From Macrostomum hystrix (taxonomy: Eukaryota; Animalia; Platyhelminthes), in contig CATNEN010000025.1 in NCBI GenBank assembly GCA_950097015.1, forward strand, positions 3,658,001-3,722,000: a stretch of 64,000 bases of DNA. Direction: 5' to 3'. The notes under the pieces are model-generated. The model was not told where the DNA came from. It did not search any database and was given only the letters and a program-made list of their open reading frames with translations. Within the stretch, counting starts at the first letter, position 1; the number at the start of each line of letters is the position of its first letter. Positions 5,121-45,812 of this stretch are shown here, one piece after another. The translations under genes were made by a program, and so were the position numbers.

Positions 5121-6086
5121 TCACCTCAAGGCCTGGGGATACACCACATTCTTCGTTCTTCCCCTTGGTGCGAAAATGAATAGGCCAGCTGGATTTCCAA
5201 CACGGGAGCAGGCGACACAAAGCTGCCCATGCGAGAAGCAAGGAGTCTCCAGGTTGATGCCAGCCACCTTCAGCGACTGTCCCTGAGCCTTGTTAATAGT
5301 CATCGCAAAGCACACTCTCACAGGGAACTGCAGTCGCTTGAACTGAAATGGCAGGTCCGTGGGGATAATTGGAATCCGGGGAACGAACACAGACTCTCCT
5401 CTGCCAGATCCAGTCATTATCGTGGCCTCAATCACGTGTGGGAAGAGCCGCCTGACTATCAGTCTGGTGCCGTTACACAGCCTTGGCGCATTCAGGTTGC
5501 GGAGGAGCATAATTGGTGCCCCAACTTTCAGCTGCAAGTTGTGCGATGGAGTTCCAGGAGGATCTAGAGAGTTCAGAAACTCAACAGGATACTCCACAGC
5601 GGTGTCATCAGTCAACGTTGTATCAATTGACTTGTAGGTGAAAACTGCACCTGGCAACTCCTGAAGCAGTTGGTAGTTAATTTCGTTGGCGGCATCATTT
5701 CTAGGACACAGAATTGCCCTCTCTGACAGCCAGTCAACGTCAGCATATCGAACCATCAGGTTCGGGTAAACTTTTGCCTTGAGCTCCTGCACTGACTGCA
5801 CAATGGTTCCGATTGTAGCGATCGATGACTGCCCATCCTCGGTGCTAATCTCCAGCAGACCATTGCCGATTCGCAATAGATTGGCAGAGAACTCATGAGC
5901 TGTTTCGTCTCCTTGAATTGTAGCTCTCATGTTTGTTCGTAGGTGCAACTTCACAACCGATGGCCACAGGTGAGATGATTTTAGGCAAGCATTAATCTCA
6001 TCAGCAGGAGTGCCACGCGGAATCACAGGCAGTGTCTGTCTAAAGTCTCCAGACAGCAGCAGAGTGACACCACCCATCAGTTGATC
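5121..6086 (-). pseudogene. C-terminal fragment of Helitron Pif1-family helicase
   Basis: Motifs LLLSGDFRQTLPVIPRG, LCNGTRL, QFPVRVCFAMTINKAQGQSL, FSHGQLCVACSRV. N-terminal Rep and helicase motifs are absent. The ORF-track start at 6251 runs into the hAT terminus and is spurious. Confidence 0.9.
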
Positions 6087-6638
6087 GCCAGCCTCTCTCT
6101 TTCTTCTATCCCAGGCTGGCTGGAGAGAAATATCGACCGGAGAGTAGGGATGCCAACTCCGGTTAACCGGTTTGCCAAAAAACCGGTTTCGGGCCGAAAA
6201 ACCGGTTTTGAAAAAACCGGTTTTTTGGTCCGGTTTTTCACGGTTTTTCACATGCTTATTAAAATTCTAAAATGGAATACAATCTAGATATAAAGAGTCA
6301 CAAGACTCACAACAACGTGACAAATGTCACAACCACAACAATACACATCACAATTCATAATGTCGCAAACAATTCAACGTGAGTCGTGACTCTTGAAAAT
6401 TAGAAATTTAAATTCAATAATTTCTTCGAAATCAAAAGTGAAAATATTATAACGTAAAATAGAATGGGATTTGTCTTGGGCAATTTGTGTTTCGTAACTT
6501 TCGTATCACCACCTACGGCTACTAGGATGGGTTTCAGACTTTCAGCTAGGCTTTCAGCATTCAGTGATTCAGATTCAGTCATTTTTCAGGGCTTCCAGAT
6601 CCAGAAGTTTTAACTTTTAGCTTTCAGCTTTCTAGTTT

Positions 6639-7827: not shown

Positions 7828-9912
7828 ATGTCTAGTCTTCCAAAGTCTAGCATATGGACGAATTTTCAGAGAATTTCTGAAAAGCAAGCTAGTTGCAATA
7901 TTTGCAAGACTACAATCCAGACTAAGGGAGGATCCACTTCGGCCATGCATGCGCATCTGAAGAAGTTACATGATATCAAACTTCCTGTTTCTGGGACAAA
8001 TACTAAGTCTGGAAATAGCAGAATGCCTCGTGCTACTAGCAGCATTAGCCAACCTTTGCAAGATAGCCAAGCTGCCCCCACTGCCACAGCTGCAGCTGGC
8101 CCAGTTGTCCAAGCTGCCCTAGCTGGCCCAACACCTGCAAAGCAGTCAAAAATAGTTGAATTTCTGTCTCGTAAGCCAGTGGATGATAATGCTATTTTTG
8201 CCAGAATGGTAGCCAAGGATGGAATTGCATTTCGATTGTTTGTAACATCTGAGGATATTCGAAGTGGTCTCCAAGCACGTGGAGTGCATGTCCCCAAGTC
8301 AAGGGAGACAATCAAGGCTCGGGTGATGTTGTTTGCAGACTCAGTTGAGGCTGAAATAAAGACAGATCTTTGTGCGCGACGCAAATGTGGTGAAAGGTTT
8401 GCCCTGACACTTGATGAGTGGACAGGTATAAACAATCGTCGTTATATGAATGTGAACATTCACTTAGCCAATCGAAGTCATCACAATCTTGGACTTGTAA
8501 GAGTTCATGGATCAATGAATGCTGAGGCTTGTTTGCAGCTTGTAACTGAACATGTCAGCAAGTTTGGAGTAGATGTCACCAAAGACATCATTGCTTGTAC
8601 TACAGACGGAGCATCAGTGATGGTGAAGTTTGGAAGGTTAATTCATGCTGAGCACCACCTGTGTTTTGCACATGCAATTCATCTGGCTGTATCTGATGTG
8701 CTTTATTGTCCTGTTGCTACCGCAGTTACATCTACTGTTTCTGTTTCTGATGTCGAAGCTGATGCATGTGATGATGCTGAAGTGGCCATGCTGTGGGACT
8801 TGTCTGATGAAGGAACTGATGGCAATGCTATGCAACTGAATCCTACTATTCAAGAACTCATTGTCAAAGTTCGCGATGTTGTCAAGTGTTTTCGCGGAAA
8901 ACCTGTGCGCAATGACACACTTCAGTCATTTGTGAAGGCAAGTCATGGATCTGAGCTTAGTCTCATCCTTGATTGTCGGACTCGGTGGAATTCCTTGCTG
9001 AGTATGGTGGATCGCTTCTTGCTGCTTTTGAAGCCCATACAGCGAGCACTCTTGCAACTTGATCTCGAATTCCCATTGGATCGCCAAGACATTGCACGCT
9101 TGAATGAAATCAACCAGGCCCTCAAACCTGTAGAGCTAATTGTGAAGACACTATGCCAGCGTGATTGCACAATCGTCACTGCAATCAATGCAGTAGAGTT
9201 CGCCATACTGAAGCTGTCAAGCCAAGAAAGTGACCCTGCACAGGATCTTTCCAGCTCACTTAAGCTGCGTATTCAAGAGCGCAGCGGACCCATAGTCACT
9301 GCAGCCAAGTTTCTCTTCCAATATGGAGCTACTGACTCAAAATCTGAGCTCAATGCCGTTAAGTATACTTTAATTGCTCTCGCCAAGAAACTAGAACTGT
9401 GTGCACAGCCTGAGGACAATGCCGATCAAACTGCTAGTGAAAGTGGAGCAGCTGCAGCAGGTCTTAACATGAATCTGGAATTGTCAACACGCTCGGAGGA
9501 GTTGGCAGCATCATCTTTACCAGCACCAGTAGCTGCGTGTTCAAGACCAGCTGAAGCAATCGACAGCAATCGGGCAAATCAGCAAGAGGTCTGCATAGGC
9601 CTAGAAGACCAGCTGAAGTTATTTTTGCAACAGAAGAATGAGCAGCCTCGAAATCGAAACCAAAGCATGACACTAGAAAGTCGAATTGGCCGCGAGATTG
9701 AGTTCCTCCGTATTGCACAGCAACGAGGCACTTTGCTCACGCAACTATACCAAGGACTTCAGCTAATTCCACCTACAAGTGTCGAGGCTGAACGTGCGTT
9801 TTCTGCAAGTGGATCTTTCCTGTCGAAAGTGCGATCTCGACTGACTGACACTACACTGTCAAGGCTCGTCATGCTCCGCCATTACTTTTTAAAGCGTGAA
9901 AGGGACACATGA
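7828..9912 (+). CDS. hAT transposase, 694 aa, with N-terminal BED zinc finger
   Basis: BED finger IWTNF..CNIC..HLKKLH; catalytic LTLDEWT, TTDGAS, CFAHAIHL, TRWNS; dimerisation domain PPTSVEAERAFS; uninterrupted ORF. Confidence 0.95.
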   Translation: MSSLPKSSIWTNFQRISEKQASCNICKTTIQTKGGSTSAMHAHLKKLHDIKLPVSGTNTKSGNSRMPRATSSISQPLQDSQAAPTATAAAGPVVQAALAGPTPAKQSKIVEFLSRKPVDDNAIFARMVAKDGIAFRLFVTSEDIRSGLQARGVHVPKSRETIKARVMLFADSVEAEIKTDLCARRKCGERFALTLDEWTGINNRRYMNVNIHLANRSHHNLGLVRVHGSMNAEACLQLVTEHVSKFGVDVTKDIIACTTDGASVMVKFGRLIHAEHHLCFAHAIHLAVSDVLYCPVATAVTSTVSVSDVEADACDDAEVAMLWDLSDEGTDGNAMQLNPTIQELIVKVRDVVKCFRGKPVRNDTLQSFVKASHGSELSLILDCRTRWNSLLSMVDRFLLLLKPIQRALLQLDLEFPLDRQDIARLNEINQALKPVELIVKTLCQRDCTIVTAINAVEFAILKLSSQESDPAQDLSSSLKLRIQERSGPIVTAAKFLFQYGATDSKSELNAVKYTLIALAKKLELCAQPEDNADQTASESGAAAAGLNMNLELSTRSEELAASSLPAPVAACSRPAEAIDSNRANQQEVCIGLEDQLKLFLQQKNEQPRNRNQSMTLESRIGREIEFLRIAQQRGTLLTQLYQGLQLIPPTSVEAERAFSASGSFLSKVRSRLTDTTLSRLVMLRHYFLKRERDT

Positions 9913-35031: not shown

Positions 35032-35080
35032 CAGATCTGACCTCGCTATCCGCCGGCTTGACCTGCATCGGCCTGCTCAT
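35032..35080 (-). CDS. CELF: CELF exon C (49 nt, RRM1-RRM2 linker)
   Basis: MSRPMQVKPADSEVRS; acceptor CCTTCCAG| at 35081, donor CTG|GTGAGT at 35031. Confidence 0.92.
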
Positions 35081-37388: not shown

Positions 37389-38077
37389 TGTTAACCAGAG
37401 CTATAAAAAACCAAAATGATCTGGGGTAGAAATTTGGATTGGTTTTTGTTCGCCCCCGCTGTCCACGGACTGAACAGCTGTACACAGCCTTTGGAAGCGC
37501 CCCACTTAATAGTTGCGGCTGTTACTTTTCATGATATAATTTTGTATTATATGCATTACCCATGTTGTAAGTAACTATTCAACTAACCAGAATTTTTACT
37601 ATGAAAAGTATTCACTTTTGGCATTGTCAGAATTTTGCATTCATTTTTTCACAAAACAAAAATTTGTAATTTTTTTGTGTAAATACTTACCATCTCGATC
37701 ATTAATTTTGTTTGAAAATTGTCATAAAATAAGTATTCAATATTTTTTATAATATACGATGCGACAAATAAAAAATCTCTACCGTACGGTACTCTCTTAA
37801 TAATACAAAAACACCGACAAATGTACTCTTCTTGGACGTACATTTTTATACAGAGCTATGTTGGACAGTTCACAAAATAGGAACGAAAATTAAAGAGGTC
37901 TATTTTTAGCATTGACACAATAAGCAAAGCTATTTAGGTGTCAACAAACCATTGCGCGTTAATACTTTGGAACTGACAAGTACTAAAATATGCGTACCAA
38001 TGTGTAAATTAATTCATCATAGACTAGCTCTGTCGCATCTAGAGATCCTAATACCCCTAGAGCACCTAGAACCCTAT

Positions 38078-38752
38078 AGATCCCCAGATCTCTAGATCCC
38101 CAGATCTCTAGATCCCCAGATCTCTAGATCCCCAGATCTCTAGATCCCCAGATCTCTAGATCCCCAGATCTCTAGATCCCCAGATCTCTAGATCCCCAGA
38201 TGTCTAGATCCCCAGATGTCTAGATCCCCAGATCTCTAGATCCCCAGATCTCTAGATCCCCAGATCTCTAGATCCCCAGATCTCTAGATCCCCAGATCTC
38301 TAGATCCCCAGATCTCTAGATCCCCAGATGTCTAGATCCCCAGATCTCTAGATCCCCAGATCCCTAGATCCCCAGATCCCTAGATCCCCAGATCTCTAGA
38401 TCCCCAGATCCCTATATCCCCAGATCTCTAGATCCCCAGATCTCTAGATCCCCAGATCTCTAGATCCCCAGATCTCTAGATCCCCAGATCTCTAGATCCC
38501 CAGATGTCTAGATCCCCAGATGTCTAGATCCCCAGATCTCTAGATCCCCAGATCTCTAGATCCCCAGATCTCTAGATCCCCAGATCTCTAGATCCCCAGA
38601 TCTCTAGATCCCCAGATCTCTAGATCCCCAGATGTCTAGATCCCCAGATCTCTAGATCCCCAGATCCCTAGATCCCCAGATCCCTAGATCCCCAGATCTC
38701 TAGATCCCCAGATCCCTATATCCCCAGATCTCTAGATCCCCAGATCCCTAGA
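38078..38752. repeat. 16-bp minisatellite (GATCCCCAGATCTCTA), about 42 copies
   Basis: Directly visible; reverse-complement degenerate copies at 39253-39527. Confidence 0.95.
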
Positions 38753-39252
38753 AGATCTCTAGAAGATCCTATTATTGGTCCCGCTGCATCCATTTCGACC
38801 ATGTCCAGCTTATCTTGTCTACTTCCGGTACAAAATCGGTGTTTCTTTTTATCTAGAGCAAAAGTTCTTATGCAGCTACTTGGAAGTAAAGTAATGAGCA
38901 CCCGGCTGGTAATTAAAGTGAAAAGCATCGAATTTCGGGGGTCACTCACCCCTGGCAGTGTCTGCTTCTCGTGTAGGGCGGCTTGGCAGTGAAGAGCGCT
39001 CTCGCGGTGGATATAGGTGAGAAATGCGCAGCCTGCGGTATCAAGGTGAGCAATATTTTGAGCAACTGATAGACAATTTGTTATCTAAGGGTTTGGTAGC
39101 ACAAAAAATGAAAATAAAATAGCTTTTCACACCGGAAAAACGCGAGATAAAAAGAAACAGCGGTTTTGTACCGGAAGTAGACAAGATAAGCTGGACATCG
39201 TTGAAATACTCGTAGATGCAGCGGGATCAATAATAGGATCTTCTAGAGATCT
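38753..39252. repeat. Inverted repeat with unique arms of about 100 bp (38753-38854 / 39145-39252) enclosing CELF exon B
   Basis: AGATCTCTAGAAGATCCTATTATTGGTCCCGCTGCATC..GTCCAGCTTATCTTGTCTACTTCCGGTACAAAA..TGTTTCTTTTTATCT matches the reverse complement of 39145-39252 with few differences. Confidence 0.9.
38950..39032 (-). CDS. CELF: CELF exon B (second half of RRM1, 83 nt)
   Basis: (G)[27 protein letters not shown]; acceptor CCGCAG| at 39033, donor GGG|GTGAGT at 38949. Confidence 0.93.
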
Positions 39253-39537
39253 GGGGGTCTGGGGATCTAGGGATCTGGGGATCTATGGATCTGGGGATCT
39301 AAGAATCTGGGGATCTAAGGAATCTAGGGATCTAGAGATATGGGATTTAGGGAACTGGGGATCTAGGAATCTAGGGAACTGGGGATCTAAGAATCTGGGG
39401 ATCTAGGGATCTAGAGATATGGGGGATCTAGGGAACTAGGGATCGAAGAATCTGGGGATCAAGGGATCTAGGGAACTGGGGATCTAGGGAACTGGGGATC
39501 TATGGATCTGGGGATCTAGGGATCTCCAGATCCACTT

Positions 39538-39655
39538 GCCTGCGGTGTCAAGGTGAGCAATATTTTGAGCAACTGATAGACAATTTGTTTATCTAAGGGT
39601 TTAATGGCACAAAAAAATATAAAAAGAAAATAGCTTCTCACACCGGAAGAAAGCT
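39538..39655. repeat. Direct duplication of 39031-39140, including the exon B 3' splice site
   Basis: GCCTGCGGT(A/G)TCAAGGTGAGCAATATTTTGAGCAACTGATAGACAATTTG..ATCTAAGGGTTT..AATAGCTT..CACACCGGAA is present twice. Confidence 0.9.
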
Positions 39656-45562: not shown

Positions 45563-45812
45563 CCTTGTGAATGCCAGTCAGCTTGTCTTTGAGCACACTG
45601 AGCTCAAGAATGGGGCCGAACTCTTCGAACAATGGCCGCAGGTCCAGCTCTTCCATGTTGCGCGGAATTTGGCCTACAAACAGTTTCAGGCGCTCCGCCT
45701 TGGCCACCAGCGGAGTGCCTCCAGGGCGAGTGGCGTCGAATACTGGCTGCTGCTGCTGCTGCTGCTGCTGATAGAGATGATGAGGCTGAAGATGCTGTTG
45801 ATGATGCGGCAT
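45563..45812 (-). CDS. CELF: CELF exon A (poly-Gln N-terminus, first half of RRM1); full gene about 513 aa over 7 exons
   Basis: [43 protein letters not shown]; donor AAGG|GTGAGA at 45562; upstream acceptor AATTCAG| at 45843. Exon lengths 250+83+49+209+123+442+386=1542 give a continuous frame. Confidence 0.9.

What the first reader, a model, noticed from the sequence alone, without database searches (positions are those of the whole stretch)
38078..39527. CELF exon B sits in the loop of a roughly 380-bp RNA stem
Seen: unique arms of about 100 bp (38753-38854 / 39145-39252) are extended by oppositely oriented 16-bp satellite blocks. The 290-nt loop holds the whole 83-nt exon with both splice sites. 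Established: long flanking duplexes drive exon skipping, circularisation and ADAR editing. Loss of 83 nt frameshifts right after half of RRM1. Inference: a structure-based on/off switch for a neuronal-type splicing regulator, built from satellite DNA; also a potential DNA cruciform or endo-siRNA source.
Basis: partly seen in the sequence, partly recalled or inferred. Interest (0 to 1): 0.75.

Follow-up and report, generated by a model that had tools for sequence, protein, structure and literature searches.

The report
Inverted repeat clamps a CELF exon
In the flatworm Macrostomum hystrix, an essential 83-base exon of a CELF splicing-factor gene sits between two mirror-image copies of intron sequence. 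They should pair into a roughly 390-bp RNA stem, but the layout looks like a local DNA-copying accident of a kind common in this genome, and nothing yet shows it is a switch.

Summary
On the minus strand, exon B (39032-38950, 83 nt) encodes the second half of RRM1 of a CELF3-6-type gene. It lies in a 290-nt loop closed by unique arms (38753-38860 / 39145-39252) that run on into oppositely oriented tandem arrays.

- **Stem:** about 395 aligned positions at 83%. The arms alone give -157.5 kcal/mol, and the ensemble pairing probability is 0.89.
- **Skipping:** loss of exon B shifts the frame and gives a stop after 11 codons.
- **Origin:** the right arm and its array are flanked by a 113-bp direct duplication (39031-39143 / 39538-39654) that also copies the 3' splice site. 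This is the signature of a fold-back or template-switch inverted duplication.
- **Age:** the arms (K2P 0.061) and the direct copies (0.085) are equally diverged, so this was one event with no extra conservation of pairing.
- **Local, not a true satellite:** the arms occur only here, and no other locus of the 16-bp array was reported in the genome.
- **Base rate:** the genome matches Macrostomum hystrix by assembly size. In 264 kb around the locus, 32% is minisatellite and there are several other inverted duplications, one with no room for an exon in its 49-nt spacer.
- **Earlier notes:** this scan already holds about 30 notes of exons between inverted minisatellites elsewhere in this genome.
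- **Function:** no transcript data could be reached, so a splicing effect is plausible but untested, and a regulated switch is unsupported.

The parts
38077..38752 (-). Homogeneous 16-bp tandem array (42 copies, 96%). It forms the distal 3' side of the stem in the pre-mRNA. It carries a 304-bp higher-order repeat, so it expanded after the inversion.
   Evidence: lag-304 autocorrelation 99.2%
38753..38860 (-). Left unique arm (3' arm in the pre-mRNA)
   Evidence: Only two copies exist in the 220-Mb genome, and both are here.
38861..38949 (-). 89 nt of intron between the exon B donor (GTGAGT) and the 3' arm
38950..39032 (-). Exon B, 83 nt: second half of RRM1 including the RNP1 motif (CAFLTY...TLPG)
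39031..39143 (-). D1: acceptor-side intron (branch region, AG, first 2 nt of the exon). One of two direct copies.
39145..39252 (-). Right unique arm (5' arm in the pre-mRNA), the inverted copy of the left arm
39242..39525 (-). Degenerate inverted array (72-78% internal matches). It forms the distal 5' side of the stem.
39538..39654 (-). D2: direct duplicate of D1 (92%) with an intact copy of the 3' splice site. This decoy acceptor lies 507 nt upstream of the real one. Reading from it in exon A's phase meets a stop after 18 codons.
45563..45812 (-). Exon A: first coding exon as read here (ATG at 45812, not confirmed by any transcript), holding the first half of RRM1. It ends in phase 1.
35032..35080 (-). 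Exon C (predicted, 49 nt: MSRPMQVKPADSE...). It holds the stop reached when exon B is skipped.

Best explanation
The structure is a locally born inverted duplication inside the introns around exon B of a CELF3-6-type gene of Macrostomum hystrix.

Origin. During replication or break repair, a DNA end that had copied as far as the acceptor-side intron (D) switched to the opposite strand. It copied the left arm and part of its minisatellite backwards, then switched back to the start of D. This left the order array, arm, exon B, D1, inverted arm, inverted array, D2. The left array later expanded and homogenised, and the right one decayed.

Consequence for the RNA. The pre-mRNA can close a 290-nt loop, holding exon B, its branch region and both splice sites, with a duplex of about 390 bp. 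I infer that this is a tolerated by-product.

Expected effects. It probably causes some exon-B skipping, which would give a premature stop and probably nonsense-mediated decay. It may also attract ADAR editing. Most functional mRNA must still include exon B, because that exon encodes the RNP1 core of RRM1.

Status of each step. Shown: the anatomy, the uniqueness, the equal age of the copies, the thermodynamic stability and the frameshift. Inferred: the template-switch mechanism and any effect on splicing.
For: - Direct 113-bp duplication D1/D2 flanks exactly the inverted arm plus array.
- Arms (K2P 0.061, 94.2 +/- 2.5%) and D copies (K2P 0.085, 92.0 +/- 2.5%) are equally diverged, which fits one event and shows no extra constraint on pairing.
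- Differences between copies are mostly substitutions with a few indels. This fits real divergence better than read error or a chimeric read.
- The arms occur nowhere else in the genome, and every reported match of the array unit lies in this one array. So this is not a transposon family.
- The array-arm boundary is part of the inverted match, so the array predates the event.
- The left array carries a 304-bp higher-order repeat at 99.2%.
- The neighbourhood is 31.9% minisatellite (95 arrays in 264 kb).
- The neighbourhood holds other inverted duplications. One is a pair of 33-bp arrays with a 49-nt spacer, too short for an exon. Others are kb-scale palindromes at 95-97%.
- Paralogous exon-B loci lack any such repeat.
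- Stability. Frameshift.
- Loop-out skipping by flanking inverted repeats is documented for Alu pairs (PMC13019027).
- Fold-back inverted duplication is documented in PMC3907307, PMC7467729 and PMC11724301.
Against: - No RNA-seq, Iso-Seq, small-RNA or long-read data could be examined, so neither the effect on splicing nor the assembly at this spot is verified directly.
- Microhomology at the inferred junctions is minimal (about 2 nt), and the junctions are blurred by later mutation.
- The orthologous locus in another Macrostomum species could not be fetched (look-up of encoding contigs closed). The age and polarity of the event therefore rest on within-locus comparison only.
- Equal divergence of arms and D copies rests on 5 and 9 substitutions, so a modest constraint on the arms cannot be excluded.
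Confidence: 0.62

Rival explanations
1. Regulated structure-based on/off switch. Formation or melting of the stem, for example by helicases, ADAR editing or transcription speed, decides between exon-B inclusion and frame-shifting skipping. This would set CELF protein levels.
For: - Very stable stem with a loop holding the whole exon and its splice signals.
- Skipping gives a premature stop.
- Splicing factors, including CELF2, are known to autoregulate through frame-shifting exon skipping (PMC2715136).
- ADAR-type genes are present.
Against: - No conservation signal: the arms have diverged like the neutral duplicate.
- The structure is absent from three paralogues with the same exon.
- The same kind of structure occurs nearby with no room for an exon and, by earlier unchecked notes of this scan, at about 30 other exons.
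- The sense-strand duplex is slightly weaker than the antisense one (-157.5 against -167.4 kcal/mol). Wobble-compatible changes therefore do not favour the pre-mRNA.
Confidence: 0.08
2. Back-splicing driver. The flanking complementarity brings the exon B donor and acceptor together and yields a circular RNA of exon B, with linear exon-skipped mRNA as the by-product.
For: - Flanking reverse-complementary sequence is the best-established cis driver of exon circularisation (reviews PMC5814467, PMC6769675).
- Circle formation is linked to exon skipping (PMC4479058).
- The arms lie only 111 and 89 nt from the splice sites.
Against: - An 83-nt single-exon circle is very small. From my own recollection of minigene work, not checked here, short exons circularise poorly.
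- No back-splice reads could be examined.
- No paper linking circRNAs, reverse-complementary matches and flatworms was found.
Confidence: 0.12
3. Assembly artefact: a palindromic or chimeric PacBio read, or a mis-join inside the repeat array, created the inverted copy.
For: - The assembly was built with canu from PacBio continuous long reads (PMC10468722). Such reads can contain missed-adapter palindromes.
- Tandem arrays are error-prone to assemble.
Against: - The inverted segment is only about 390 bp, deep inside a 9.7-Mb contig.
- It differs from its partner mainly by substitutions.
- It is accompanied by an equally diverged direct duplication.
- The assembly was polished with long and short reads to QV 42.8.
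- A missed-adapter artefact would give a near-perfect, read-length palindrome.
Confidence: 0.05
4. Insertion of a foldback or MITE-like transposon whose terminal inverted repeats are the arms and arrays.
For: - Terminal inverted repeats with internal tandem subrepeats resemble Foldback-type elements.
- hAT and Helitron-like ORFs are in the window.
Against: - Arms and array are single-locus in the genome.
- The 'loop' holds a conserved ancient exon that continues the RRM1 reading frame.
- The 113-bp direct repeat flanks one arm only, not the whole element, and is far longer than a target-site duplication.
Confidence: 0.02

Closest known systems
Loop-out ('jump') exon skipping by inverted intronic Alu pairs in primates (e.g. 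TBXT; PMC13019027)
   Same: - Reverse-complementary sequences in the two introns flank one exon.
- A stable stem is predicted, with the exon looped out.
- The repeat is lineage-specific and young.
- The expected outcome is an exon-skipped isoform.
   Different: - The arms are not transposon copies. They are one local inverted duplication of unique intron sequence plus a minisatellite.
- The loop is much shorter (290 nt) and the stem longer than typical Alu pairs.
- Skipping has not been observed here.
Circular-RNA exons flanked by reverse-complementary matches (PMC5814467, PMC4479058)
   Same: Close, strong complementarity on both sides of an exon, which is the main known cis determinant of back-splicing.
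   Different: - The exon is only 83 nt.
- There is no back-splice evidence.
- The organism's circRNA biology is undescribed in the literature I could search.
Autoregulatory frame-shifting exon skipping in splicing factors, e.g. CELF2/CUGBP2 exon 6 (PMC2715136)
   Same: A CELF-family gene in which skipping of one RRM-coding exon shifts the frame and creates a premature stop.
   Different: - In CELF2 the silencing works through protein binding to GU-rich motifs around the branch sites, not through an RNA stem.
- That exon lies in RRM2, not RRM1.
- No autoregulation has been shown here.
Fold-back / template-switch inverted duplications (PMC3907307, PMC7467729, PMC11724301)
   Same: - An inverted copy sits next to its source, separated by a unique spacer.
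- A short direct duplication accompanies it.
- The copies are of equal age.
   Different: - The scale is hundreds of bp inside a gene, not kb to Mb.
- The event is germline-fixed in a flatworm.
- The junction microhomology is no longer clear.

Membership tests
Exon looped out by flanking intronic inverted repeats | Reverse-complementary sequences in the upstream and downstream intron of the same exon | tested here: met
   395 aligned columns at 83%. The arms lie 111 nt upstream and 89 nt downstream of exon B.
Exon looped out by flanking intronic inverted repeats | The stem is thermodynamically favoured over local alternatives | tested here: met
   Arm-arm pairing probability 0.89 in a 1.9-kb context. 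The centroid keeps the stem. Arms -157.5 against -37 +/- 5 kcal/mol when shuffled.
Exon looped out by flanking intronic inverted repeats | An exon-skipped isoform exists and depends on the pairing | not testable with these tools
   No transcript data were reachable. The protein databases hold no M. hystrix CELF model.
circRNA-forming exon | Back-splice junction reads | not testable with these tools
   No RNA-seq access.
AS-NMD autoregulatory cassette of a splicing factor | Skipping or inclusion introduces a premature stop | tested here: met
   Skipping gives a stop after 11 codons in exon C.
AS-NMD autoregulatory cassette of a splicing factor | The regulatory flanks are conserved among paralogues or orthologues | tested here: not met
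   Three paralogous exon-B loci have no inverted repeat. The arms are single-locus. Orthologues could not be fetched.
Fold-back / template-switch inverted duplication | An inverted copy adjacent to its source, with a direct duplication at the switch-back point | tested here: met
   D1 39031-39143 and D2 39538-39654 bracket the inverted arm plus array.
Fold-back / template-switch inverted duplication | All duplicated parts are the same age | tested here: met
   K2P 0.061 (arms) against 0.085 (D copies); the identity ranges (94.2 +/- 2.5% and 92.0 +/- 2.5%) overlap.
Fold-back / template-switch inverted duplication | Microhomology at the junctions | tested here: inconclusive
   About 2 nt (GC) at junction 1 and none clear at junction 2. 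Later mutation blurs both.
Foldback / MITE transposon | Multiple dispersed copies in the genome | tested here: not met
   The arms match only themselves. All reported matches of the array unit are at this locus.
CELF3-6 (Bruno-like 4-6) RNA-binding protein gene | RRM1 with CELF-type RNP2 and RNP1, and best matches to CELF3-6 | tested here: met
   - Pfam RRM_1 positions 1-36 fall in exon A.
- PDB best hits are Bruno-like 6 and 4 for both exons.
- Named database hits are all CELF3/4/5/6.
- Only RRM1 was examined. The exons were searched one at a time.

The most novel reading that the evidence does not exclude
Macrostomum hystrix has a genome-wide mutational habit of making local inverted duplications of intronic minisatellites. 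This would play the part that inverted Alu pairs play in primates: dozens of exons, this CELF exon among them, would be clamped in long pre-mRNA duplexes. That would create lineage-specific exon skipping, circular RNAs and ADAR substrates. At this locus the stem would titrate the output of a neuronal splicing regulator through skipping coupled to mRNA decay.
Probability: 0.15. Interest if true: 0.6.

Novelty: new member of a known kind. Interest (0 to 1): 0.33.

Why it matters
If the stem forms in vivo, it would be a clean natural example outside primates of repeat-built RNA structure acting on an essential exon of a splicing regulator. The arms come from a local inverted duplication, not from transposons.

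More broadly, this genome is about one third minisatellite in the sampled region and is rich in inverted duplications. It could therefore be a good system for asking how often such accidents are tolerated, edited or co-opted.

As it stands, the locus is a well-defined candidate rather than a demonstrated mechanism. Public M. hystrix RNA-seq and Iso-Seq data were made for the genome paper (PMC10468722), so the test is cheap.

Tried and rejected
- **Transposon origin:** rejected, because arms and array are single-locus.
- **Small-RNA gene in the arms or loop:** Rfam gave only sub-threshold MIR8024 hits (about 30 bits against a gathering score of 57). They come from the self-complementary AGATCT core of the array and are treated as chance.
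- **Second, mutually exclusive copy of exon B in the gene:** none. The only other matches are three paralogous genes elsewhere.
- **Orthologous locus in another Macrostomum species:** The other locus-fetching tools cover only viral, metagenome or prokaryote collections, so conservation could not be tested.
- **Transcript-derived protein isoforms:**
  - The representative search and two word searches found the M. lignano protein A0A1I8IVX5 as the nearest relative. Its model stops at the end of exon A.
  - All other named hits are CELF3-6 proteins.
  - No M. hystrix entry and no exon-skipped ORF turned up.
- **Wider genome sampling for a base rate:** The base rate therefore rests on 264 kb.
- **Spliced model:** Exons were searched one at a time by reference. 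The only joins were made inside one script: the last base of exon A was put in front of exon C, and in front of the sequence after the D2 decoy acceptor, to read the frame.
- **Human DNA:** the contig is not human.

Full report
**Organism and gene**

The window is contig 25, 3,658,001-3,722,000, of an assembly of 220,453,370 bases in 42 contigs. These are exactly the figures published for Macrostomum hystrix by Wiberg et al. 2023 (PMC10468722). The contig is not human.

A CELF gene lies on the minus strand.
- Exon A runs from the ATG at 45812 to 45563 (250 nt, phase 1). It carries positions 1-36 of Pfam RRM_1. It matches human Bruno-like 6 and 4 and CELF1/2 up to the residue where exon B begins.
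- Exon B is 39032-38950 (83 nt), bounded by an AG acceptor and a GTGAGT donor. It encodes CAFLTY...TLPG. This aligns without gaps to residues 57-83 of Bruno-like 4 (E 8e-8) and to CELF1, 2 and 6.
- Exon C starts at 35080.
- Named relatives are all CELF3/4/5/6.
- Four paralogous genes in the genome share the same split of RRM1.
- Many truncated gene models from other animals end right after the same 'HKG', so the intron position looks ancient.

**The observation**

- The left array, 38077-38752, has a 16-bp period, 42 copies and 96% matches.
- The right array, 39242-39525, has the same 8/16-nt motif on the opposite strand but is degenerate, at 72-78%.
- Between them, 38753-38860 and 39145-39252 are reverse complements. 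Identity is 89% by BLAST, or 94% outside one 6-nt indel.
- BLAST joins arm and array into one inverted match of 395 columns at 83%, with 291 nt between the arms.

As pre-mRNA, the 1450 nt fold to -848 kcal/mol, and the centroid keeps the arms and proximal arrays paired. The arms alone give -157.5 kcal/mol, against -37 +/- 5 when one arm is shuffled. In a 1.9-kb context the 5' arm pairs with the 3' arm with mean probability 0.89, and the two arrays pair with each other at 0.88. The longest uninterrupted helix in the arms is 35 bp.

Skipping exon B shifts the frame and gives a stop after 11 codons.

A 113-bp stretch of the acceptor-side intron, D1 (39031-39143), includes the branch region, the AG and the first two exon bases. 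It is repeated in direct orientation at D2 (39538-39654), immediately beyond the right array.

On the plus strand the order is: array, arm, 89 nt, exon B, D1, inverted arm, inverted array, D2. Equivalently, a block of 507 bp (D, inverted arm, inverted array) has been added.

This is the pattern expected when a growing DNA end takes three steps:
1. It copies through D.
2. It switches to the complementary strand at the inner edge of the left arm and copies the arm and part of the array backwards.
3. It switches back to the start of D.

Such fold-back or template-switch inverted duplication is described in PMC3907307, PMC7467729 and PMC11724301.

Supporting points:
- The two kinds of copy are equally diverged: arms K2P 0.061 (5 substitutions in 86 sites) and D copies 0.085 (9 in 113). 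This fits one event and gives no sign that arm complementarity has been preserved more than neutral sequence.
- The array-arm boundary lies inside the inverted match, so an array already existed at the time.
- The left array has since expanded: it has a 304-bp higher-order repeat at 99.2%. The right one has decayed.
- Junction microhomology is at most about 2 nt and is blurred by later change.
- D2 keeps an intact copy of the 3' splice site, 507 nt upstream of the real one and just outside the stem. Reading from it in exon A's phase meets a stop after 18 codons.

**Not a transposon, not a genome-wide satellite**

The arm sequence has exactly two matches in the 220-Mb genome, namely the two arms. 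All 41 genome matches of a two-unit array pattern (up to 2 mismatches) lie in the left array. Rfam finds only sub-threshold hits caused by the palindromic AGATCT core.

**How unusual is it in this genome?**

I joined the window with the next 200 kb.
- Of these 264 kb, 31.9% lies in 95 tandem arrays, mostly with 14-60-bp units.
- Besides the CELF locus there is a second short-range inverted array pair: a 33-bp unit with 9.7 and 12.6 copies and a 49-nt spacer that leaves no room for an exon (L021:4700-5504).
- There are also several kb-scale inverted duplications at 95-97% identity, one of which mirrors three different arrays.
- Earlier unchecked notes of this scan list about 30 cases of exons between inverted minisatellites in this genome. 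Two follow-ups reached the same verdict as mine: real, locally born, no evidence of regulation.
- The three paralogous exon-B loci have no flanking inverted repeat.

The arrangement is therefore best seen as one product of a frequent mutational process that happened to enclose an exon.

**How it probably works**

Shown:
- The duplex is overwhelmingly favoured on thermodynamic grounds.
- It needs only about 400 nt of transcription between its two arms.
- It encloses the branch region, both splice sites and the exon.

Established elsewhere:
- Such loop-outs promote exon skipping (PMC13019027, which traces the idea to the 'jump splicing' work of the 1980s).
- They also promote back-splicing (PMC5814467, PMC4479058).
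- Long duplexes are ADAR substrates across Metazoa (PMC9989829).
- Planarians have two functional ADARs (PMC8797187).

Tested here: the genome has two loci that combine dsRNA-binding domains with an adenosine-deaminase domain. They lie on contig 9 at about 212.6-215.4 kb and on contig 2 at about 4,197.9-4,205.3 kb.

Inferred:
- A fraction of transcripts skip exon B and are lost to nonsense-mediated decay.
- The arms may be edited.
- Most mRNA keeps exon B, since that exon encodes the RNP1 core of RRM1.

A dedicated, regulated switch is not supported. There is no conservation signal. The antisense duplex would even be slightly more stable than the sense one (-167.4 against -157.5 kcal/mol), although with so few differences this is weak evidence.

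**Limits**

- No transcript, editing, small-RNA or raw-read data were reachable.
- The protein databases hold no M. hystrix CELF model.
- Exons were searched one at a time by reference.
- An assembly error is unlikely but unverified. The copies are substitution-diverged, the inverted segment is small and deep inside a 9.7-Mb contig, and the assembly is polished to QV 42.8.

**Verdict**

The functional reading is plausible in kind but untested, and as an adaptive switch it is unlikely. The locus is a new member of a known kind: an exon flanked by intronic inverted repeats. Interest is moderate to low. The main value is as a ready-made test case, and as part of a genome-wide pattern.

Noticed in passing
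L021:4700-5504 (contig 25, 3,816,700-3,817,504): A second inverted minisatellite pair. Its 33-bp unit has 9.7 and 12.6 copies in opposite orientation, about 86% complementary, separated by a 49-nt spacer with no room for an exon.
   Followed up: partly
contig 25, about 3,800,457-3,818,413; 3,821,432-3,833,694; 3,855,124-3,863,163 (L018-L028): Kb-scale inverted duplications at 95-97% identity with 5.6-12-kb spacers. One mirrors three different minisatellite arrays in reverse order.
   Followed up: no
window 1-64000 plus L012-L031: 31.9% of 264 kb lies in 95 tandem arrays, mostly with units of 14-60 bp. The published repeat analysis of this genome left the nature of the repeats open (PMC10468722).
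   Followed up: partly
array consensus units across the same 264 kb: Minisatellite units are enriched for GATC/CTAG-type cores. GGGATC occurs in 9 of 95 units against 1.4 +/- 1.2 in shuffled units. GATC occurs in 20 against 10.7, and CTAG in 22 against 10.3. Other palindromic 4-mers are not enriched.
   Followed up: no
window 7828-9912 (+) and 5121-6251 (-): An intact-looking hAT transposase ORF (BED finger plus hAT dimerisation domain) and a Pif1-type helicase ORF (Helitron-like) lie downstream of the part of the CELF gene examined.
   Followed up: no
P0003 (UniRef A0A1I8IVX5, Macrostomum lignano): The nearest database relative is an 842-aa model whose last 66 residues are the CELF exon-A sequence. 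It stops exactly at the exon A/B boundary. The long N-terminal part looks unrelated, so the model is probably chimeric or truncated.
   Followed up: no
window 39090-39140 (minus strand, D1): Two UGUG motifs lie 65-100 nt upstream of the exon B acceptor. CELF proteins bind GU-rich elements, but two occurrences in 113 nt is close to chance.
   Followed up: no
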